64,000 nucleotides of DNA, taken from assembly GCF_001447785.1 (NCBI RefSeq), contig NW_015177015.1, forward strand, positions 396,165-460,164, read 5' to 3'. Shown here in pieces: positions 4,266 through 44,866 of this stretch. Both the position numbers and the translations under genes were made by a program. The number at the start of each line of letters is the position of its first letter. Positions within the stretch are counted from its first letter, which is position 1. The DNA comes from Gekko japonicus. Taxonomy: Eukaryota. The notes under the pieces are model-generated. The model saw only the letters and a program-made list of their open reading frames with translations. It did no database searches and had not been told where the DNA came from.

Positions 4266-4454
4266 ACCAATGTGAATTCTTTCCCACTGTAAATTTGTTA
4301 TTAACACTGGAAACAATAGAAAGGTAAAAAAAAAAAGAGTTAAGATTCTGTCCAGTAGTATTAGATTTTTCCTGTAAGGAAAAGAAAGGCGGCAGTCTGC
4401 AGATGTCCTCGGTGTATAGTAAATGTAAACTTGATGTAGCAGATTTAATTACAT

Positions 4455-6120
4455 ATTTATTTATTTATTATTTCTATTTGTATCCTGCCTTGCCGGGCAC
4501 GCTGGCTCAAGGCGGCTAACAGAGTTAAAATAATGTAAACAATACAGAGTTAAAACGATTAATAAATACAACACCAAGTTAAACAGCAACAGTTTACAAG
4601 TAAAACCGACAGATGATGGCGATAATCCAAATCACACCCAATGATAGGAGTAGCATCCAGTGAGGTCTCAGGCCAGAAGATGTTCTAGATTTCAGGCCAG
4701 ATGTTCCAGGGCATATTCATCAGTGGCAGCTCCTAATCGAAAGCCTGGTGGAAGAGCTCCATTTTACAGGCCCTGCGGAACTGTAAAAGGTCCCACAGGG
4801 CCCTAATGTCCTCCGGGAGCTCATTCCACCAGTATGGGGCCGCCATTGAGAAAGCCCTGGCTTTGGTGATATTCAGTCTGGCTTCTTTTGTACCAGGGAG
4901 GGTCAAATGATGTTGCGACCCTGACCTCAGTGCTCTCTGGGGCACATGTGGGGAAAGGTGGTCCCTCAAGTAGGCCCCTGACCATATAGGGCTTTAAAGG
5001 TTAAAACCAGCACCTTGAACCGAATCCGGTACGCTATAGGCAGCCAGTGCAGTGTCCTCAACACAGGCTGGATGTGGTCCCATATAGAGAGGCCCATCAA
5101 CAGCCTGGCTGCGGCATTCTGCACTAGCTGCAGCCTCTGGATCTAGGACAAGGGCAGCCCTACATAGAGAGCGCTGCAGTAGTCTAATTTCAAGGTGACC
5201 ATTGTGTGGATCACTGTTGCTAGGTCATTGCGTTCGAGAAAGGGAACCAACTGCCTAATCAGCCATAGGTGGTAAAAGGCCACCTTGGCAGTGACTGCTA
5301 CCTGGGCCTCCATTGTTAAGGAGGCATCCAGGAGCACTCCCAGGCTCCTAATCCTCGGCGCTGGCACCAGTGGTGCCCCACCGAAGTTCAGTAGTGGGAT
5401 CCCTACCCCCGACCCGCTCCGACTCAAGGACAGGACCTCTGTCTTCATTGGATTCAATTTCAATCGACTCAGTCTAAGCCAGTCCACCACATCCTGAAGC
5501 GCCCGCTCCAGGTAATGTGGGTTGGAATCGGATCAGCCGCCCAACAACAGATATACACCCCAGCCCGTGCCTCCAGGGAATCTGGGCGAGGGGGCGCATG
5601 TAGATGTTAAAGCCCAACAACAGATATAGCTGAGTGTCATCAGCGTACTGATGACACGCCAGCCCATGCTTCCAGGGAATCTGGGCAAGGGGGCACATGT
5701 AGATGTTAAACAACATTGGGGATAGCACCGCCCCTTGAGGCACCTCGCACAACAGCAGGTGCCTCTGGGATGTCTGCACCTCTAACGCCACCCTCTGTCC
5801 CCGACCCTGGAGAAAAGAGACAAGCCATTGCAAGGCAAGCCCTTGGATTCCAGTGCTGGCGAGGTGGTGGATCAGTAACTGGTGGTCGATGGTGTCAAAC
5901 GCTGCCGACAGATCCAACACCAGTACCGCTGTACTGCCTCGACCCAGATGCCTTTGGAGGTCATCTGTGAGAGCGACCAGTGCCGTCTCTGTCCCATGAC
6001 CCGGTCGGAAGCCAGACTGAAATGGGTCCAGCATGGAAGTGTCATCCATAAAGCTCTGCAACTGAATCGCCACTGCTGTCTCCAGTACTTTGCCCAAATA
6101 GGGCAAATTGGAAACCGACC
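4455..6120 (-). mobile_element. L2 LINE, 5'-truncated, RT region plus (TAAA)n tail
   Basis: DPFQSGFRPGHGTETAL, LDLSAAFDTIDH, PQGAVLSP, YADDTQLY, LKLNPMKTE, LDYCSAL motifs. Confidence 0.92.
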
Positions 6121-16984: not shown

Positions 16985-17565
16985 ATTTATTTATTTATAT
17001 TTATATTTATTTATTTATCTTTAGATTTGTATCCCGCCCTACCCCGAAGGCTCAGGGCGGCTAACAAGGGCACAAAGTGCCAAGATTAAAACAATAAAAG
17101 CACATGATATAAAACAGTAAAATACAGTAACAAAATCACAGTGCTCCATTTGTCACAAGATGGGGTAGATCTTAAACCCAACGGTAACTTTCCCGAAATC
17201 TATCATCCTTTTGCTGCCAGGGGCACCTCGCACCCCCAAAGGGGCCAGATAGTCGTGATGATGGTGCGACGGTGCATAGATGGCAATGATGGAGTAATAG
17301 TGGCGGTGGCTCCTACTCGAAAGCCTGGTGGAAGAGCTCTGTCTTGCAGGTCCTGCGCAACTGAGAAAGATCCCGCAGGGCCCGGATCTCCTCCGGGAGC
17401 TCCTTCCACCAGGTAGGAGCTGCCACCGAAAATGCCCTGGCTCTGGTCACCACAAATTTAATATCCTTGGGGCCTGGAATTTCCAGGAGATGACGACCCC
17501 CCGACCGTAGTGCCCTTGGGGGAACATATGGAGGTAGGCTGGACCCTGACCATAACCCTGGACAT
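16985..17565 (-). mobile_element. L2 3' fragment
   Basis: RAFSVAAPTWWKELP...CKTELFHQAF ORF end plus (TAAA)n tail. Confidence 0.88.
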
Positions 17566-28439: not shown

Positions 28440-28934
28440 CAGGGGTCAATTTTTGCGGGAGCGCACAGGAGCGGAGCTCCAGCAGTAAGGAGCCCAGGGG
28501 GTGGGCACATGCAACAAGCCCCGCCCCCTGCTCCCAGCAGCCCTCAGTTGGGCCACGAGGAGCAAGAAGCAGCCAGGGAAGTTTCAGAGTCCCCCCCCCC
28601 CACCCCGCGCGAGAGCACCNNNNNNNNNNNNNNNNNNNNNNNNNNNNNNNNNNNNNNNNNNNNNNNNNNNNNNNNNNNNNNNNNNNNNNNNNNNNNNNNN
28701 NNNNNACAAGTTTATTCAGGGCACAGCCCCCCCTCCCCCGTGAGGACAGATCTGCCCATCCCCCCCCCCCCCAAATAGCTAGCAATCTAAAACAGTCCAG
28801 TGGAGCCTGAGCAGTGGGTGTTACCTTCTGACACACTTCCAGTGATGTCAGGGGGTGTGGCATATGCAAATAAATTATGCAAATAAGTTATGCTAATGAG
28901 CTCCTGCACCTCTTTTTCTACGAAATGACCCCTG
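28440..28934. mobile_element. Non-autonomous hAT transposon (MITE); spans an assembly gap at 28620-28705
   Basis: TIRs CAGGGGTCAATTT / AAATGACCCCTG; 8-bp TSD CTAATAAT / CTAATCAT; sister copy at 60236-60634. Confidence 0.85.
28620..28705. other. Assembly gap (N run)
   Basis: Run of n between poly-C/GC-rich flanks. Confidence 0.99.
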
Positions 28935-34856: not shown

Positions 34857-35775
34857 TTTATTCATTTATTTATTCAATTTATACCCCACCCTCCCTGCTG
34901 AGTGGGCTCAGGGCGGCTTACAAAGAGATTAAACATATAGACAGCTGTGCCCTGTGGGACCTAGTTTATTTAATTATTAATTATTCAACTTATACCCTGC
35001 CCTCCCTGCAAAGCAGGCTTAGGGTGGCATACATTCATTAAAACAAATTCCATAATATATAAATAGCAGTTAAAATCCATTAAAATCCACATACAACAAT
35101 TCAGTTTCAGTAATAATAATAATAATAATAAGTGCTGTCAATGGTTTCACTAATTATGCAAGGCAGCATACTCTTTATAAGTTTTTCAGTTACTTGTGTG
35201 ATGTTCTTCACACAGGCCGGCTATCACAGCAGAGAGTTGGTGGTGATAGTGGGGGCGGCTCCTAGTTGAAGGCCTGGTGGAAGAGCTCCATCTTGTAGGC
35301 CCAACGGAACTGTAAAAGGTCCTGAGGGCCCTGATCTCTTCTGGGAGCTCATTTCATCAGTACGGAGCAACAACTGAGAAGGCCCTAGCCCTGGTTGTGG
35401 CCAGCCTGGCATTTTTAAGACCTGGGAGGCCAATTTTGTGACCCTGAACACAGTGCTCTCAGGGGAACGTGTGGGGAAAGGCGTTCCCTCAGGTATGTGG
35501 GCCCCTGACCATAAAGGGCTTTAAAGGTAAGTACCAGCACCTTGAAGTGAATTCGGTATGCTATCGACAGCCAGTGCTGGATGTGCTCCCATATAGTGAG
35601 GCCCATCAGAAACCCGGTTGCAGGATTTTGCACTAGCTGTAGCTTCTGGATTTGGGTCAAGGGCAGCCCCATGTAGAGAGCATTACAGTAGTCCAATCCT
35701 GAGGTGACCATTGCATGGATCACTGTCGCCAAGTCATTGCATTCGAGTAAGGGAACCAACTGCCTAAGAACACAA
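34857..35775 (-). mobile_element. L2 fragments (two 3' tails plus RT C-terminus)
   Basis: LDYCNALYMGLP..KLQLVQN..FKVLVLTFKAL motifs; (TAAA)-type tails at ~34857 and ~34965. Confidence 0.88.
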
Positions 35776-36755
35776 GCTGCAGCCCAGCAACTGATGAGCA
35801 GAAAGGTACGGGTTGATATGGATTTCTCCTGATGTTCCCCTCCTCTCATTGGTCCCTTCTGACCCCTGGGAAGGGTTTTCTCCCATAGACAAAAAGGCAC
35901 ATGGAGTGTGTTTGGGGGCGGTACAGTGTGGAAGGAGAAAGGTGAGATCCGTCCCTCTTCCGCCAGCAAAGCTACACATCCAAAAGAAGTGTGACCCTCC
36001 CCCCCCCTTGTTACTGCGATCCCCAAGCCATGTAGCTGTTGCAGATTCACTCCAGTGCTGAGTTAAATGTGGAAGAAGCCAATTGTTTTTACTGTTGTAT
36101 TATGGGCAAATTTCCCAATTGCTTATACAAGTTCCCATGAGTCTTCATGGGCTTTAACTTGTAGGATTCTGATGCTAAAAGTCTTGTATGTGCTGTGCTG
36201 TTTACCTTGTAATCAATATATATGAACAAAAGGCAGAAATCCATTTTTAGTCATCGTAGTAGTCCCTTTTAAAGCACAATGGTTTCTAATCCATGTTAGT
36301 GAAAACAAACTCAAGGGAGTAGCATTTCTACCAGAAAATTAAAGATAAGAACATTAAATGGCCAGCCACTTTCCTATGAATCTGAAACACAGTCTTCGTC
36401 AGTCGTATATCTGTCTCACTTCCATTGGCAGGGATACCTGTCTTAACTATCCACCAGGAGTCAGGATGCAATTACTTAATCATCATTTGTGTCCTTAGCC
36501 ATAGAGACAGTTGATCTGGTTTCACGTGTTCACATTGACTACCTTTATCAGGTATGACTGGGATTAGAATGACCCTTGTCTGTTTCTCCTTGGTAACCAG
36601 GTAACCCCACCTCAGGAATGCATTTAGTAGTTTGGTCTCCTAATAAAGTAAAGCAGTTTCAAAGGAGCTCTTGCTATACCTAGCAGCAAAGTCTGAACAC
36701 TGATGGAAGACTTGTCAAAACAGCTCCTAGTTGCTTTGCAGTGAGCAGGAGGAAG

Positions 36756-36776
36756 ATGAATAGAACTCATCCCCAG
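36756..36776 (+). CDS. LDLRAD1: LDLRAD1 exon 1 (MNRTHPQ)
   Basis: ATG in AAGATG context, 21 nt, CAG/GTAT donor; corresponds to recalled human MNKVFPQ. Confidence 0.75.
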
Positions 36777-37124
36777 GTATAAAATCATCCATCACCTTTG
36801 AGAAGTGATTTGTAATTATTGTTTTTAGTATGATCAGCCACTGGGTTTTTTAAATGCTGGCTTCAGTTGGTTCCTACGAATTACAAGAGTAACACTGATC
36901 TCAAATGAAATAATATTATCTGCATGTTTCACAAATACGGAAAATGTTTTTTAAAAAATTTAAAATCTCTGTGTGGTGACATACATTCTGCAATTGGATA
37001 GGGATGTGGTAAATTTAACTTACATGCTGTCTCTTTGCTTTAAGGTTATGCATGTTCTCTGTGTGTTGTCTTAGAGATTTTTTTCCTTACCATAAGGTAT
37101 GAATTTTATTTTTATTAAATACAG

Positions 37125-37173
37125 AATGCCGTTTCACTGGGTTCAAGAAAATCCCTCTTTGCTGCTACGAGAG
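37125..37173 (+). CDS. LDLRAD1: LDLRAD1 exon 2 (NAVSLGSRKSLFAATR)
   Basis: T-rich tract plus CAG acceptor, GAG/GTAATT donor, 49 nt, phase 0 to 1, expected position and size; protein sequence poorly conserved. Confidence 0.65.
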
Positions 37174-37824
37174 GTAATTAGTACTTGTCCTCCTACAAAA
37201 TATTTCTGTAATATATAAAAAATAAAGGACACACAGGCATGTTCAAAAAGTAGAAAATAATTGAAAGATTTAAAGAATGTAATATACATATAAATTACCA
37301 ATTAGTGTTTAATAGTTTGGTCTAAAAATGGGCTAATTATAGAAGATGTTATAAACAAAATGCCTTTCATTCACTGAGAAGTAGCATTCTCTAGGCAGGA
37401 GATCTGTGTCTAGAAACGTCATGAAACATACCTAACTTAATCTTTATGCTTTAGTTGCAGCATTTGTCAGGGGTTTTCCACCTCCATTGAAATGGTGGAG
37501 CAGAGGCCGTATGTATGACAGCAGTGAGAAACTTGGAGGGAATGTTTGTTTCAGAGTATTTCAGAGCAGTTTGCTTATTTCTGTCGGCATCTTTTGTCTT
37601 CAGTCTCCACATTTCCTAGTAGAAAAGTTTTAGAAAAAAGAGTCCATGGCATTTCACGACAGCTAATTCTTAAACATCTCATAAAAGGATGGCAATGATA
37701 GATTTTTGAGACTCTAAAGGCAAATATGAGCCTTGTGGGAGAGAGGGGAGAGGAACTGGTGAAGGATTACAAGCAGCTGCTAAGACCTAATCCTCCCTCA
37801 GTGGCAGCTTCACAAAATGGACTA

Positions 37825-37932
37825 ATTTATTTATTTATTTATTTATTATTCACATTTCTATCCCGCCCTCCCCGGAGGCTCAGGGCGGCTTACAGGGCAT
37901 AATGCCAGATAAAACAGTAAAACAATACAAAA
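37825..37932 (-). mobile_element. L2 3' tail abutting the DIRS right terminus
   Basis: (TTTA)n plus atcccgccctccc...gctcagggcggcttaca, as in the other L2 tails. Confidence 0.8.
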
Positions 37933-38325
37933 AAACAGGTGATCTACGAGTGGTCATCTGTGCATTCACACCGATGGGTCTAGTGCGCCTGCGCTGGACC
38001 AGACCAGTACTGTAGCAAGCTCTTTCCGAAGGAATCTTCGCGCTCGTTCCCTCAGGCAGCAGCAGGAGCCCAGTGCGCATGCCCAGAGGGACGGGCGCGG
38101 ACATCCCCTCAGTTCCTCCAAAACACCGCCGCATATCAACCTCCAACAGGAAAGTAGAAGCTGACAGCAGCGGGGAAGGAGGGTGGGTGGTGTGAATGCT
38201 CAGATGACCACTCGAAGATCACCAGTTACTGGTAAGCAACCTGTTTATCTTCTTCGTGGTCTCTGTGCTTCACACCGATGGGAGATTAGCGAGCTATAGC
38301 CTACCTGGAGGAGGGTGCTGGCAGG

Positions 38326-41216
38326 TTAATGCTCAGCCGAAGACAAAATGCGACGTCCCATGTCAGCCTTGCTGTTCCTTCGGACGTCAATGGCATAATG
38401 TCTGATAAAAGTATTAGGAGTGGCCCAAGTTGCAGCGTTACAGATGTCGTGCAGTGGCACTCCTTTGAGAAAGGCAGTGGATGTCACAAGAGCTCTGGTG
38501 GAATGAGCCCTGATAGGGCCAGGCAGCTGTCGTTTCGCAAGCAGGTAGCATAGCCGAATTAATTCCACTATCCACTTAGACAGTCGTTGCGATGTAACAC
38601 GACTTCCCAGTCTTGAGGACGCATATGAAACAAATAAATGCGGATCTCGTCTGGTCGGCTGCGTCCGTTGCAAGTAAAACAAGAGGGCTCTCTTAACATC
38701 CAACGTATGAAGCAGTCGGTCCTCATCCGACGTAGGGTTTGGGAAAAAATCTGGCAGTACTACTTCAGCCTGCAGATGGAATTCCGAGACAACTTTAGGT
38801 AAAAACGAGACGTCTGGCACCAAGCGAATCGCGTCCGGGAGGACGGCAAGGTAAGGTGGGTCATGCCTAAAAGCCAACAACTCTCCCACCCTCCTGGCCG
38901 ACGTGAGGGCGGTCAAGAAGGCTGTTTTCCAAGCCAGTAGGCGTAACTCACATGAAGCAAGCGGTTCAAAGGGCTTTCGAGTCGGCGCAAGACAAGGGGC
39001 AGGTCCCAGGGGACAACTGGAGATTTAACAGGAGGATAAAGTCTCAACAATCCCTTCAGAAAACGTTTAGTAACTGGATGCATGAACAGTGTGCATCCCT
39101 CAATCTGAACATGAAATGCCGATAGAGCGGCTAAGTAAACACGCAACGAGGAGTGGGAGAGTCCCGAGTCAGCTAGGGATAGTATAAACGAAAAAACTTT
39201 CTCCAGTCCAGCTGAAGCTGCGTGACGTGTATCAGTTCCCAGGAAGGAACAAAATTTCTTCCATTAACTGTCGTAATACCTTCTTGTGGACGGTTTTCTC
39301 GAATTCAATAAGACGTGAGCTATACGCGTGGAGAAGGTTGAGAAATTATTCGCCACGCCGTCAGTTTCAGTTGTTTGACGTTGTGGTGCAGAACCGGTGA
39401 GTCTGGAAGACAAAGTAGGTCTGGGGCAAAGGGAAAGTGATGAAAAGTTCCCTGAGATAGTTCCAGGAGCGTGGAGAACCAGGGCTGTCTGGGCCACCAA
39501 GGCGTCACAAGAATCACGTCTGCATTCTCTCTGAGAATTCTGCGAACCACTCTGAGTAGCAGAGGCAGGGGAGGGAACATGTAGAGATGTTGCTTGGACC
39601 AAGGATAAAGCAGACCGTCCCCTAGGGACTGTTCGTCGTAACCTCCGCGGCTGCAGAATAGACGACACTTCTTGTTCTGACTTGTGGCAAAGACGTCGAC
39701 TTGGGGAGTCCCCCACTTCTGGAAAAGAGGAAGGAGGTAACGATGGCTTATCCCCCATTCGTGTAGGCTGAGTCCAGAGCGACTTAGATGATCTGCCTGC
39801 ACGTTCAGACGTCCTGGTATGTGAGTCGCCACTAGAAAGATATTGTTGGTTCTGCAGAGGTCCCACAAATCTATTGCAAGATTGCAAAGGCGCATGGATA
39901 CCGTACCTCCTTGCCTGTTTATGTACGAGACTGCCGTGGTGTTGTCCGTCAGAATGGTAACGCACTTTCCCTCGATTAAGGGGAGGAAGCTTGTCACCGC
40001 GTGGCGAACTGCCAGAAGTTCTAAGTAATTGATGTGAGGAGCTACCATGCTTGCGTCCCACCTGTCTCCGATGGAGAAACCCATGGAGTGGGCACCCCAA
40101 CCCTTCATCGAAGCATCTGTAGTAATGGTGACTTCTGGTACTGGAGGGTGGAAAGGAGCTCCCTGGAGGAGATTTTCTGGTAGAGTCCACCACCTTACTG
40201 CATCCCTTATGTGGGCAGGAGGTGCAAGTGTTATCGCGTGAGCGTCCCAAGACGGATTGTATTTGCGTAGAAACCACAGTTGTAAGCGCCTCATCTTGAG
40301 CCTCGCGAAAACCAAGACTGCCGTCGTTGCGGCCATGAGACCTAATAGTCGTTGGATGAGGAAGGCTGTGGTCGTGGGCCCTGTGCAGAAATGTGTGGCA
40401 AGGGAAGTAATGTCCTTGGCTCTGTCTGGGGGCAGGTATGCCATACACACAGTGGAGTCCAGGATGGCCCCTATATACTGTATCCGTTGTACAGGGCAAA
40501 GATGTGATTTTTGTAGATTGACCTTCAGTCCCAGGTCGTCCAGGAGGGACAACGTGTCCGTGACGTTCAAGGTGAGAGAGTGTTCCGACGGAGCGACCAT
40601 AAGCCAGTCGTCTATGTAGGGGTAGATGGACACCCCTTTGAGACGTAGGAAAGCCGCCACTACAATCATCACCTTCGTAAACACTCAAGGGGCGCTGGAG
40701 AGGCCGAACGGAAGGGCCGTGTACTGGAAGTGTTCTTGGCCTATAGCAAACCTGAGGTATTGACGGTAAAAGGGGTGGATATTGAGGTGAAAGTATGCGT
40801 CCTGCAAATCCAGGGTAGCCATCCAGACCCTCTTGTGGAGTAGTGGTAAAATTTGTTGAAGAGAGACCATACGGAAGCGGTGATATGAAACGTAACGGTT
40901 CAATCCTCTCAGATCTAGAATAGGTCGAACTCCACCGTCTCTCTTCGGCACTGTGAAATAGCGGGAATAGAATCCCCGTCGCTGGAGGTGAGGTGGTACA
41001 GGTTCGATGGCCCCTTTTTGCAGAAGGAGGGAAACCTCTAGAAGGAGGGGGGAGGGAGGGGTGTAGACTACCACAGGAGTGTCTGGACTCTGATGGAATT
41101 GAATCTTGTAACCATGGGTCAGGATGGAAAGGACCCATTGGTCTGATGTAATGAGACTCCAGGTCTGCAGAAAAGGGAAAAGGCGGGTGGATGCTGACTC
41201 GGGACAAGGAAGTCAA
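38326..41216 (-). pseudogene. DIRS ORF3: 650-codon N-terminal region overlapping pol, followed by the tyrosine recombinase (one stop at 39264-39266, one frameshift near 38980)
   Basis: SRKPSTRRYYDS*WKKF, WDLPLVL, TSARRVGEL, FLPKV, AHSTRA, AATW, RHY: R/HxxR/W/Y catalytic set intact. Confidence 0.92.
39320..41212 (-). pseudogene. DIRS pol: reverse transcriptase, RNase H and methyltransferase-like domain, with one nonsense codon at 40685-40687
   Basis: KGAIE, RPILDLR, LDLQDAY, LPFGLSSAP*VFTK (probable CGA>TGA), YIDD, TDAS, HINYLEL, TDN, DVFA...YMFPP...PWWPRQPWF; same frame as gag. Confidence 0.93.
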
Positions 41217-41572
41217 AAACCCTGCTTAGAAGGCTTCGTTTGCTTTCCTCTCGGTGCTTGTTGTGAGGCACCAAACTTAGATTTCTGATAAGCCGGTTTC
41301 TGGCTCCCAGAATATGCATGCGGTCTCCAGCGTGATTCTGGTGATTGATGCGACGAATTGCGCCTCTGCCAAGGCCTGGACCAGGTACGTGGTCTGTGTT
41401 GTTGTCTTGAAGAAGACGACACTCCTAACGCTCTGGAAGCTTTAATACTTTTATCCAACTCCTGCAGAGTTGCGTCAGTGTTGGCGTTAAAAAGTCCTTG
41501 CCCATCGAAGGGCATATCTTCGACTTGGGCTCTAGTGTCAACTGGAAGAGAAGTACTACGCAACCAGGAATT
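41213..41572 (-). pseudogene. DIRS gag, C-terminal fragment (SWLRSTSLPVDTRAQVEDMPFDGQGLF...KQGF*)
   Basis: WLRS...EDMPFDGQGLF motif typical of vertebrate DIRS ORF1; truncated upstream of ~41572. Confidence 0.85.
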
Positions 41573-41574
41573 AG

Positions 41575-41649
41575 CTCTGCTTATAGCTGGCATCATAGCT
41601 GGCATCATTGTATTGATTGTTACTGTTGGAATCCCTCCATCCACACCAG
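41575..41649 (+). CDS. LDLRAD1: LDLRAD1 exon 3, 3' part only (ALLIAGIIAGIIVLIVTVGIPPSTP, transmembrane); 5' part replaced by DIRS sequence
   Basis: Hydrophobic run ending GIPPSTP resembles recalled human ...LVTILGLPSCTP; CAG/GTCGGT phase-1 donor joins in frame to exon 4; upstream sequence is DIRS gag with no polypyrimidine tract. Confidence 0.75.
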
Positions 41650-41749
41650 GTCGGTCAGTGCTAGCTTTTAAAACATTTTTATTATCATCAAGCCATTTCC
41701 AAGGAATAATTGTAGCAACACATTCAACATACCAAATGTTGAATGTGGG

Positions 41750-42045
41750 TGGTCTTGGTCCTTCTCTGGGATCTCTATGCCTGGAAGTGATATCATTGCC
41801 TATGGCACATTGCAGGAGACGTGCTATCATTTAAGGAAAAACGCTATGGTTTTTCCTTAAATGATTGATCATCCCCCCACACAAACAATGTGCCCTGCAC
41901 TATGACATTACCTCCGGGTGATGTCATTGCGTTGGGCATGTTGGCGCAAACACAACACTTTGGGATGGGGTTCCCCCGCCAGCTGGATCAGGGCCGGCAG
42001 ATTGGGGGTTGTGAAAGCGGGCAAACCCCTGCCCCTGGCACCCCA
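41750..42045. mobile_element. Palindromic MITE-like element (probably hAT-derived) with a central perfect 17-bp hairpin
   Basis: ATCATTTAAGGAAAAAC-GCTATG-GTTTTTCCTTAAATGAT at 41826-41865; a similar degenerate element at ~195-460. Confidence 0.55.
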
Positions 42046-42049
42046 ACTG

Positions 42050-42480
42050 TCTGGCTGCTGTGGTAAATTGCCTAAAAGTGAACAAATTTAAACTAAACCC
42101 TGAAAAGACAGAGGTGATGCTGGTTGGGAAGGTGGAGATCTTGAAGGATATGATGCTTCTCACTTTTGATGAAGTTCAGCTTGAACCACTTAAGAGCCTT
42201 TGTGTTATACTGGATCTAACTTTATTACTGGAGAAGCAAGTTAATACAGCTGCAAAAAACACTTTCTACCAACTCAAGCTAGCCCAAAAGATGGCCCTTT
42301 ACCTTGATACTGGATCTATGCACAGTAACATTGAAAGCAGACCATAGCTTCAAAAGCAAACTACTGTAATGCACTGTAGATTGGTCTCCCCTCAAAATCA
42401 GTTTGGAAACTCCAGTAGGTGCAGAATGCCGAAGTTTGGCTATTATCTGGAGCTAGATATGTATTCCATTCTGCAGTCAC
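42050..42480 (+). mobile_element. Old L2 RT fragment
   Basis: NKFKLNPEKTEVMLVG motif, ctactgtaatgcact, gcagaatgc. Confidence 0.8.
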
Positions 42481-42838
42481 TCCCTTCATGGCCTTTCAAC
42501 CTAGCCTATCTCACAAGGAGACTGTGAGGATAAAATGCAAGAAAGAACAAGTTGTGCCACCTTGAGCTCCTTAGAGGAGGAGTGGGATTAAAATGCAACA
42601 CATAGAAGTTTGTCACCTATTGTCAGGTAACACTGTGCTCCTGGTGAAATGAGCTCCATTAAACCTTGTGCTCCATTAATACTTATGCCACAACAAATGT
42701 TGTTAGACTTTAAGGTGTTATGCTATCCCTTTTTTTGTGCTACCTCTGTAGGATTTGTTGCAAGGGGTGGTGGTGGGTGGATTGATGAGATCTGATGAAA
42801 ATGTCTCTGTATCAACATTTTTCAAAATCTCTCTTCAG

Positions 42839-42976
42839 TGAATCGCTTGTGTGTCACTACCAATAATCAGACGGGCTTTTTATGTGATGACAGAGAGGCC
42901 TGCATCCCTGCCAGCCAAGTCTGTGACCAAAGAAGAAATTGTGCAAATGGGGAGGATGAGCAAGAATCATTATGTA
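42839..42976 (+). CDS. LDLRAD1: LDLRAD1 exon 4, LDLa repeat 1 (NRLCVTTNNQTGFLCDDREACIPASQVCDQRRNCANGEDEQESLC)
   Basis: AG/GTAAG bounded, 138 nt, LDL-receptor class A Cys pattern. Confidence 0.95.
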
Positions 42977-43727
42977 GTAAGAATCATATTTCACTCTGTT
43001 GGTCCATGTCACATGCCCATTTGCTCCCCAGTGTTTCTCAGAAGTTTTCTAAGGTGTCACACCATAGCAAAGACACTTAGAGAGGGAAAAAGAAAACTTG
43101 AGGGTAACGGTAAAGTTTTCTGCTTCCATTGATTGTAAGTGGTTAATTGCTGTAGCTCTTGTATGTGAATAATGAAGTTCACAGGTAGGAAAATGAATTC
43201 CTGGTCATCTGATAATTCCAACCTCAGTGAAGGTTATCGGATAAACCAGTATTCTCTGTTAGAAAATCAACATAACCATAAGACCTTTTTCCCCCCATTA
43301 GGATGTGAACTACTTTTTCACAGAACTTAAATACTTCGACATCTGCCTACCTTTGCAGGTCCCATAGCATCACCCTTGTAGTGAAAACAAAAAATGGTAA
43401 AGCCCTTTTAAAGCAAAAGACTGTCACTGGAGAGATTAAGATTAAGTTGACACAACAAGATAGTGTGAGTTACATCATCACTGACTGCTTCTCATTTTCC
43501 CCGTACAAGATGATAGGGATGATCCCTTCACATAGCCAGAACATTTCTAAGCTTGCTTTTAAAACATTTACACAAATTTAAGCTGTTTTATTATAAGAAT
43601 CCACAAGTCATTACTAATGCTATTTATGACTAATTAGTAAATTTTAAATTACTAATATTTTGTCCTCCTGCATATTATATACTGTGCTGTGGGATGGCTT
43701 AATACACTTCGGTTTCTTTTCTTGTAG

Positions 43728-43856
43728 ATGATTTGCCCAACAGCCTTCCGGGATACCTCATATTTTATTGTGGCAACCCCAGATCTTGGATCTATGCTGA
43801 CAAAAGATGTGATAGGATGAATGACTGTGGAGATTGCTCTGATGAAACAGGGACCT
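43728..43856 (+). CDS. LDLRAD1: LDLRAD1 exon 5, LDLa repeat 2 (DLPNSLPGYLIFYCGNPRSWIYADKRCDRMNDCGDCSDE)
   Basis: TAG/GTAAGT bounded, 129 nt. Confidence 0.95.
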
Positions 43857-44717: not shown

Positions 44718-44866
44718 GGGCCAGTTGTACTCCTTGTGGGCCTCAGTGGTGGAGCTGCACCATGGTAGTCTTCCATGCTTACTGTGCCTGCATTCCCAGG
44801 AGTCTTTGCAACGATGGAGTACAGCACTGTTCGGACTGGTCTGATGAATATGTCTGCTCGAGATAA
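44718..44866 (+). CDS. LDLRAD1: LDLRAD1 last exon, LDLa repeat 3 (...CGPQWWSC...QHCSDWSDEYVCSR*)
   Basis: CAG acceptor, TAA stop, conserved QHCSDWSDEY. Confidence 0.95.

What the first reader, a model, noticed from the sequence alone, without database searches (positions are those of the whole stretch)
41540..41655. DIRS retrotransposon fused into the LDLRAD1 transmembrane exon; exon 5' half and acceptor are gone
Seen: antisense DIRS gag (...NSWLRSTSLP) runs with no spacer into plus-strand ALLIAGIIAGIIVLIVTVGIPPSTP followed by a phase-1 donor. I could not find the upstream half of this exon (in human, as I recall, a Cys/Arg-rich CCSRRGAC stretch) or its acceptor on either side of the element, and the DIRS 5' half is also missing. 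Inference: one deletion joined an intronic DIRS to mid-exon 3. All other LDLRAD1 exons are intact. Two in-frame outcomes remain: the junction TTAG (41571-41574) as a new phase-1 acceptor with a poor pyrimidine tract, giving 186 aa with a shortened anchor region, or skipping of this symmetric 1-1 exon, giving 161 aa with no membrane anchor. This may be a TE-driven remodelled or hypomorphic allele, or a mis-assembly.
Basis: partly seen in the sequence, partly recalled or inferred. Interest (0 to 1): 0.85.

Follow-up and report, generated by a model that had tools for sequence, protein, structure and literature searches.

The report
LDLRAD1 exon truncated at DIRS junction
In this gecko assembly the membrane-anchor exon of LDLRAD1 has lost its first 63 bases and its splice acceptor where it meets a truncated DIRS retrotransposon. 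Two other animals of the same species carry extra sequence at that point, so this is more likely an assembly error than a remodelled gene.

Summary
Six LDLRAD1 exons lie on the + strand. All are complete except exon 3. Its homology to every squamate ortholog starts at 41571-41574, directly against antisense DIRS ORF1. About 21 codons and the acceptor are missing, and they occur nowhere in the 64-kb window. These codons encode a Cys-rich stretch, "CCK..MCIPCTRRCICISAV" in three geckos.

The DIRS has its 3' end but stops inside ORF1.

Contigs of two other DNA samples of the same species never bridge 41571|41572:
- One single-copy-depth contig carries 383 unlike letters left of 41572.
- A DIRS contig carries 188 unlike letters right of 41571.

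Those animals therefore hold at least 383 bp that this assembly lacks. RNA from another animal uses the exon 3 to exon 4 splice. The assembled individual differs from all these samples at SNPs, so its own reads were not seen.

Unchecked scan notes report many exon deletions and frameshifts in essential genes of this same assembly.

My odds:
- assembly deletion artefact, about 0.6;
- real private or polymorphic deletion allele, about 0.33.

It is not a species-wide remodelling. Interest is low.

The parts
36756..36776 (+). LDLRAD1 exon 1 (MNRTHPQ), donor GT at 36777
   Evidence: tblastn gave 7/7 identity to P0091 and P0164. Sequence read.
37125..37173 (+). LDLRAD1 exon 2 (NAVSLGSRKSLFAATR plus 1 nt), phase-1 donor
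   Evidence: 14/17 identical to Paroedura.
37174..37815 (+). Unique part of intron 2, shared with other individuals
   Evidence: X1 and X2 single-copy contigs cover 37100-37815 with 1 SNP and stop where the repeat starts.
37816..37930 (-). SINE-like tail fragment with an (AAAT)n run
   Evidence: Sequence read. Three further copies lie in the window. K-mer depth is about 10^3 times single copy.
37934..38325 (-). DIRS 3' terminal region with complementary repeats (ICR/ITR-like)
   Evidence: Inverted repeat 37934-37972 / 38189-38227, 92% complementary. Direct copy read at 38246-38280. Structure as described in PMC3266345.
38326..39146 (-). DIRS tyrosine-recombinase region, two ORF pieces in different frames
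   Evidence: ORFs. PHROG_1 integrase at E=0.0047. An HxxR ... RHY motif is visible by eye. No Pfam match.
39320..41074 (-). DIRS pol (RT, RNase H), split by a frameshift at 40684/40685
   Evidence: Pfam RVT_1 at 1.1e-08 and 3.9e-06. RT_RNaseH at 4.7e-04, below its cutoff.
41213..41571 (-). DIRS ORF1 (gag position), C-terminal 119 codons only. The N-terminal part and the left terminal repeat are absent.
   Evidence: ORF. X2 contig 14 fits 41003-41571 and then runs on for 188 unlike letters. No Pfam match.
41571..41572 (.). The junction. DIRS interior is joined to mid-exon 3. No contig of X1 or X2 bridges it.
   Evidence: table 8, records 7, 14 and 15. Ortholog homology starts here.
41572..41649 (+). 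Remnant of LDLRAD1 exon 3: 3' 78 nt, transmembrane helix plus PPSTP. The donor GT at 41650 is used in RNA.
   Evidence: X18 RNA joint 41649 to 42839, GT..AG, 3 reads.
41466..41574 (+). Candidate cryptic acceptors if the allele is real: cag|41468 (frame shift, early stop), agag|41470 (in frame, adds 35 codons of antisense DIRS), tag|41536 (in frame), ttag|41575 (in frame, weak)
   Evidence: Pyrimidine counts in -23..-4 are 14, 14, 13 and 8 of 20. The gene's real acceptors score 12-16. No RNA evidence.
42015..42344 (+). LINE reverse-transcriptase fragment in intron 3
   Evidence: Weak RVT_1 match. High-copy depth.
42839..42976 (+). LDLRAD1 exon 4 (first LDLa domain)
   Evidence: 46/47 identical to Paroedura and 45/47 to Heteronotia. 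Splice sites read.
43728..43856 (+). LDLRAD1 exon 5 (second LDLa domain)
44718..44866 (+). LDLRAD1 exon 6 (C-terminal domain and stop codon)

Best explanation
The window holds the LDLRAD1 gene of a gekkonid gecko. Intron 2 carries an old, degenerate antisense DIRS1-like retrotransposon.

In other animals of the species this DIRS copy continues past window position 41571. Exon 3 is preceded by at least 383 bp that the window lacks. In this assembly the stretch between the interior of DIRS ORF1 and the middle of exon 3 is missing. That stretch holds the rest of ORF1 and the DIRS 5' end, the last part of intron 2, the acceptor and the first 63 nt of exon 3.

I judge it most likely that the assembler or a gap-closing step dropped this stretch at a repeat edge. 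The animal's gene would then be intact and nothing is remodelled.

Shown: the missing half-exon, the truncated DIRS, the lack of bridging contigs, and the longer form in two other samples.
Inferred: that the extra letters in those samples contain the missing exon half, and that the loss arose in assembly rather than in the germ line.
For: Ortholog comparison:
- Three gecko proteins and all other squamates have 21-22 more codons before ALLI....
- None of this stretch is in the window.

Reads:
- X1 contig 7 is 922 nt at depth 69.8, against 71 for unique flanks. It fits 41572-42106 and has 383 unlaid letters to the left.
- X2 contig 15 has 73 unlaid letters to the left.
- X2 contig 14 fits 41003-41571 at depth 112 and has 188 unlaid letters to the right.
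- No joint leads to 41572.
- X2 depth over the DIRS interior is at single-copy level (17-90), with about 0.45% differences. The same DIRS copy is therefore probably allelic there.
- The left edge, unique sequence to repeat at 37815/37816, is shared.
- The X18 RNA joint 41649 to 42839 shows the gene is spliced normally downstream.

Assembly quality:
- The window has an 86-N gap of estimated size, so this is a scaffolded, gap-closed assembly.
- Both indels in unique DNA make the window shorter than X1 and X2 (table 4).
- Scan notes on the same genome list apparent exon deletions or frameshifts in HOXA13, HOXA4, HOXC13, VPS11, NEK9, BTK, ABHD3, PHKG1 and a NIPA2-like gene, and in the neighbours DIO1 and HSPB11. 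So many lesions in essential genes are hard to credit in a living animal.
Against: - No reads of the assembled individual itself were seen. X1, X2 and X18 all differ from the window at 37730, 42681, 42855 and 42909, all transitions. The window therefore comes from another animal, which could carry a real structural variant.
- Logan contigs show presence, not absence.
- The 383 letters were not readable, so their content is inferred.
- LDLRAD1 has no characterised function. TM-less isoforms are annotated in other species (P0125, P0159), so a damaging allele could be tolerated.
- The scan notes are unchecked AI readings.
Confidence: 0.6

Rival explanations
1. A real germ-line deletion allele, private or polymorphic. 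After the DIRS entered intron 2, one deletion of at least 383 bp removed the DIRS 5' part, the end of intron 2, the acceptor and 63 nt of exon 3. Possible transcripts would be: skipping of the symmetric 1-1 exon 3 (161 aa, no anchor); use of cag|41468 (frame shift, early stop, probable decay); use of in-frame AGs at 41470 or 41536 (anchor kept, 35 or 13 antisense-DIRS codons added); or use of the weak TTAG|41575 (186 aa, anchor kept). All of these lack the Cys-rich juxtamembrane stretch.
For: - The window's animal differs from X1, X2 and X18 by transitions in unique DNA, so other true variants are expected.
- The DIRS copy and its left flank appear to be shared, which fits a secondary deletion.
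- DIRS integrates as a full circle (PMC3266345), so a 5'-truncated copy implies a later deletion.
- Exon 3 skipping keeps the frame and is annotated as isoform X2 in Podarcis (P0125) and in a mammal (P0159).
- The frame is open for 75 codons upstream of the remnant.
Against: - The junction was not found in two DNA samples. X1's alternative contig has full, not half, depth.
- No RNA joint runs from 37173 to 41470, 41536, 41575 or 42839.
- Many similar exon lesions are reported in this assembly.
Confidence: 0.33
2. Native gene structure. In this lineage exon 3 naturally begins at 41575, and the Cys-rich stretch was lost or moved long ago.
For: Exon 2 ends ...SLFAATR. Joined to the remnant, it gives a segment of the same length as in mammals. 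A 20-residue hydrophobic helix remains.
Against: - Paroedura, Heteronotia and Eublepharis all keep the Cys-rich stretch between the exon 2 sequence and ALLI....
- Other animals of the same species have different sequence left of 41572.
- The acceptor tract has only 8/20 pyrimidines.
Confidence: 0.02
3. The DIRS inserted directly into exon 3, so the other exon half should lie at the far end of the element.
For: The element abuts coding sequence without a spacer.
Against: - No match to the missing half anywhere in the 64 kb, including 37174-38325.
- The far end abuts a SINE tail and unique intron DNA.
- The DIRS end at the exon is internal (ORF1), not a terminus.
Confidence: 0.02

Closest known systems
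LDLRAD1 of other geckos (Paroedura picta P0091, Heteronotia binoei P0167, Eublepharis macularius P0164)
   Same: Same six-exon layout and phases. Exons 4-6 are 84-98% identical. The exon 3 helix and PPSTP motif are conserved.
   Different: The orthologs have 21-22 further codons at the start of exon 3 (CCK..MCIPCTR.CIC.SAV). The window has antisense DIRS there instead.
DIRS1-like tyrosine-recombinase retrotransposons (PMC3266345)
   Same: ORF1, then RT-RNase H, then a YR-like ORF, all co-oriented. Complementary repeats follow the YR. Size is under 6 kb. These elements are abundant in lizards (775 copies reported in Anolis).
   Different: This copy lacks its 5' end (left terminal repeat and ORF1 N-terminus). 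It has frameshifts in RT and YR. Its YR is detected only weakly.
Annotated LDLRAD1 isoforms without the anchor exon (Podarcis lilfordi X2 P0125, a mammalian X2 P0159)
   Same: Exon 2 joined straight to exon 4, in frame.
   Different: Those are alternative splice forms of intact genes, not the result of a damaged exon.
Exonised DIRS gag in host genes (TMPO/LAP2alpha, PMC4495291)
   Same: DIRS ORF1 sequence lies beside or inside host coding exons.
   Different: In that case the sense gag was co-opted and conserved. Here any exonisation would be antisense, and it is unproven and hypothetical.
Deletion-type errors of gap-closed short-read assemblies (general knowledge)
   Same: Sequence is lost exactly at a repeat edge, the window contains a sized N gap, and many small exon deletions are reported genome-wide.
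   Different: Not demonstrated for this site. The assembly method is unknown to me.

Membership tests
LDLRAD1 ortholog | Exon-by-exon similarity to vertebrate LDLRAD1, including the LDLa domains and the LDLRAD1 C-terminal domain | tested here: met
   Exon 6 retrieves LDLRAD1 proteins. tblastn gives 84-98% identity to gecko orthologs.
LDLRAD1 ortholog | Complete anchor exon with a Cys-rich juxtamembrane stretch before the helix | tested here: not met
   Homology starts at 41571-41574. The stretch is absent from the window.
LDLRAD1 ortholog | Transcribed and spliced | tested here: met
   Exon 3 to exon 4 joint in X18 RNA, 3 reads, from another individual.
DIRS1-like retrotransposon | Reverse transcriptase | tested here: met
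   Pfam RVT_1 at 1.1e-08, 35.5 bits, above the cutoff.
DIRS1-like retrotransposon | RNase H after the RT | tested here: inconclusive
   RT_RNaseH at 20.7 bits, below the 24.8 cutoff.
DIRS1-like retrotransposon | Tyrosine recombinase instead of integrase, downstream of pol | tested here: inconclusive
   PHROG_1 integrase at E=0.0047. HxxR and RHY motifs seen by eye. No Pfam or PDB match. The AF2 model has pLDDT 49 and is unusable.
DIRS1-like retrotransposon | Methyltransferase-like domain between RNase H and YR | not tested
   No profile for it was at hand.
DIRS1-like retrotransposon | Inverted terminal repeats with internal complementary regions | tested here: inconclusive
   The 3' side shows a 39-nt, 92% complementary pair plus a direct copy. 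The 5' terminus is absent, so the pairing cannot be completed.
Real structural variant (deletion allele) | Independent reads or contigs cross the junction 41571|41572 | tested here: not met
   None in X1 or X2. Both carry unlike sequence on each side.
Real structural variant (deletion allele) | Reads of the assembled individual cross the junction | not testable with these tools
   The source run was not identifiable.

The most novel reading that the evidence does not exclude
The junction is a real, segregating DIRS-associated deletion in this gecko. It would be a natural allele of LDLRAD1 that has lost the Cys-rich juxtamembrane motif. It would either secrete an anchor-less protein or splice antisense DIRS codons into the anchor exon.
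Probability: 0.3. Interest if true: 0.35.

Novelty: not a real feature. Interest (0 to 1): 0.15.

Why it matters
If this is an artefact, the value is practical. Exon lesions in this assembly should not be read as gene loss or remodelling until they are checked against reads. This site adds to a run of similar reports in the same genome.

If it is real, it would be one more TE-associated deletion allele in a gene of unknown function. It could serve as a natural hypomorph for asking what the conserved Cys-rich stretch and the membrane anchor of LDLRAD1 do. It would not be a new kind of mechanism.

Tried and rejected
The other collections hold no vertebrate genomes, so only proteins could be compared.

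2. Looking for the intact allele as an ORF called on public contigs: a two-row profile of both strands of 41573-41831 found nothing. A blank there means little.

3. Missing exon half elsewhere in the window: tblastn at word size 2 and E up to 50 gave no credible hit.

4. Exon 2 as the "missing" Cys/Arg stretch: I considered this because the lengths match a mammalian protein. I rejected it because geckos have both the exon 2 sequence and the Cys-rich stretch.

5. Homology for ORF1 (gag): no Pfam match. The Atlas gave only a 0.81 lead to a cluster partly carrying the LAP2alpha domain. Treat that as a lead only.

6. YR fold: the single-sequence model had pLDDT 49, so no fold search was run. The PDB sequence search was blank.

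7. Other DIRS copies in the window, to define the truncation point: none found.

8. Literature on LDLRAD1: only association-study mentions, with no functional work.

Exons were searched by reference one at a time. Frames of hypothetical splice products were checked only by local translation.

Full report
**What is in the sequence.** The window is vertebrate DNA with one 86-N gap. A search with the last coding exon (44720-44863) retrieved LDLRAD1 proteins. The closest are from geckos: Paroedura picta (P0091), Eublepharis macularius (P0164) and Heteronotia binoei (P0167). tblastn with these proteins places the exons as follows:
- exon 1 at 36756-36776;
- exon 2 at 37125-37173;
- exon 4 at 42839-42976;
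- exon 5 at 43728-43856;
- exon 6 at 44718-44866.

All five have canonical GT/AG sites and matching phases. Exon 4 is 96-98% identical to Heteronotia and Paroedura, so the window comes from a gekkonid gecko.

**The observation.** Between exons 2 and 4 only the 3' part of exon 3 is present. The + strand reads ALLIAGIIAGIIVLIVTVGIPPSTP, followed by a phase-1 GT donor at 41650. In every squamate protein tried, homology starts at 41571-41574. The three gecko proteins have a further 21-22 codons in front, a Cys-rich stretch of the form CCK..MCIPCTR.CIC.SAV. By the Paroedura count, 63 nt of the exon plus the acceptor are missing. A permissive tblastn finds this stretch nowhere in the 64 kb.

Immediately to the left, on the other strand, lies the C-terminal 119 codons of a DIRS ORF1 (...NSWLRSTSLP...).

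**The element.** Read on the minus strand, the order is as follows:
- ORF1, 41571-41213;
- RT, Pfam RVT_1 at 1.1e-08, split by a frameshift at 40684/40685;
- an RNase H-like stretch, below the Pfam cutoff;
- a YR-like ORF, 39146-38326. PHROG_1 integrase scores E=0.0047, HxxR and RHY motifs are visible, and Pfam and PDB give nothing;
- a terminal region with a 39-nt, 92% complementary pair and a further direct copy.

This matches the published DIRS1-like layout (PMC3266345). [quoted passage not shown] The 5' end is absent, meaning the ORF1 N-terminus and the left terminal repeat. DIRS elements integrate from a complete circle, so a 5'-truncated copy implies a later loss.

**Other individuals.** I laid contigs of two DNA samples (X1, X2) and raw RNA reads (X18, X19) of the same species on 37100-43000.
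- No contig bridges 41571|41572.
- X1 contig 7 is 922 nt at depth 69.8, against 71 for the unique flanks. It fits 41572-42106 and has 383 letters to the left that lie on nothing in the stretch.
- X2 contig 15 has 73 such letters to the left.
- X2 contig 14 fits DIRS 41003-41571 and runs on for 188 unlike letters to the right.
- I calibrated the orientation of minus-strand records on contigs 8 and 16. Both end 23 letters left of 42600.

The edge between unique sequence and repeat at 37815/37816 is shared. In X2 the DIRS interior is covered at single-copy depth with about 0.45% differences. X1 and X2 therefore probably carry the same DIRS in intron 2, but in a longer form. Ahead of the exon 3 remnant they also hold at least 383 bp that the window lacks. 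The full depth of X1's contig argues against X1 being heterozygous for the window's form.

In X18 RNA, three reads join 41649 to 42839 (GT..AG). The gene is therefore expressed, and the exon 3 donor is used in that animal. No joint from 37173 reached the listing threshold.

**Real allele or assembly artefact.** X1, X2 and X18 agree with each other and differ from the window at 37730, 42681, 42855 and 42909, and at two small indels in unique DNA. The assembled animal is therefore none of these. Its own reads were not seen. The data show that the window's form is not the species' normal gene. They cannot show whether it exists in any animal.

Three points tip me towards an artefact:
1. The breakpoint sits at a repeat edge in a scaffolded assembly that has a sized N gap.
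2. Both indels in unique DNA make the window shorter than the other samples.
3. Notes from this scan on the same genome list many apparent exon deletions and frameshifts. Several are in genes that an animal can hardly lose: HOXA13, HOXA4, HOXC13, VPS11, NEK9, BTK, ABHD3, PHKG1 and a NIPA2-like gene. The immediate neighbours DIO1 and HSPB11 are also listed.

Those notes are unchecked, so I treat them as a prior and not as proof. My odds are about 0.6 for an artefact and 0.33 for a real private or polymorphic deletion. The remainder is spread over a native short exon and a direct insertion into the exon, both of which the evidence contradicts.

**If it is real.** The TTAG|41575 acceptor has 8 pyrimidines in the 20 positions from -23 to -4. 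The four real acceptors of this gene have 12-16. The frame is open for 75 codons upstream, and better-looking AGs exist:
- cag|41468 has 14/20 pyrimidines, but it shifts the frame and meets an early stop.
- The next AG, at 41470, is in frame and would add 35 antisense-DIRS codons.
- tag|41536 has 13/20 pyrimidines, is in frame and would add 13 codons.

Skipping of the symmetric exon is also plausible. Exon 2 to exon 4 isoforms are annotated in Podarcis (P0125) and in a mammal (P0159). Every outcome loses the Cys-rich stretch. I infer, without testing, that this stretch is a cytosolic juxtamembrane motif. None of these products has RNA support.

**Limits.**
- A profile search for ORFs of the intact allele was blank.
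- The YR model was too poor to search with.
- ORF1 has no family match and only a weak Atlas lead.
Exons were searched singly by reference.

**Verdict.** This is most likely not a real feature of the animal. If it is real, it is an ordinary TE-associated deletion allele in a gene of unknown function.

Noticed in passing
window 38085-38281: The DIRS terminal (ICR/ITR-like) region has summed k-mer depth about 10^4 times single copy in both DNA samples and is transcribed (36-50x in X18). Contigs show variant joints: 38283 back to 37979, and 37972 skipping to 38185. These suggest tandem, circle-junction or deleted forms of this terminus.
   Followed up: partly
window 37816-37930; also 16999-17099, 34857-34922, 4454-4522: A SINE-like tail with an (AAAT)n run, directly abutting the DIRS 3' end. 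It marks the edge between unique sequence and repeat that is shared with the other individuals.
   Followed up: partly
window 37730, 42681, 42726, 42805, 42855, 42909: Two DNA samples and one RNA sample of the species agree with each other against the window at every variable site in unique DNA. The differences are transitions plus two small insertions. X1 holds only 72% of the window's sampled 31-mers. The assembled animal is therefore a different, fairly divergent individual or population.
   Followed up: partly
window 42976/43728 (exon 4/5 boundary) and 37125-37173: The codon split between exons 4 and 5 reads AAT (Asn), where the other squamate proteins examined have Ser or Arg. Exon 2 is two codons shorter than in Paroedura.
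   Followed up: no
window 42015-42344 and 41830-42420: A LINE reverse-transcriptase fragment in intron 3, with depth 9,000-24,000. X1's contig differs from the window here by 16 letters and 6 gaps.
   Followed up: no
window 40684/40685 and 38913-38916: The DIRS RT and YR reading frames are each broken, so this copy is degenerate and not an active element.
   Followed up: partly
window 35415-36050 (-): A 211-codon ORF with a retroelement-like C-terminal motif lies about 700 bp upstream of the LDLRAD1 start codon.
   Followed up: no
window 28620-28705: An 86-N gap of estimated size. It was left untouched and suggests a scaffolded, gap-closed assembly.
   Followed up: no
P0125 (Podarcis), P0159 (mammal), P0164 and P0178 (Eublepharis, Crotalus): Annotated LDLRAD1 isoforms skip either the anchor exon or the first LDLa exon. 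All internal exons are phase 1-1, so the gene tolerates in-frame exon skipping.
   Followed up: partly
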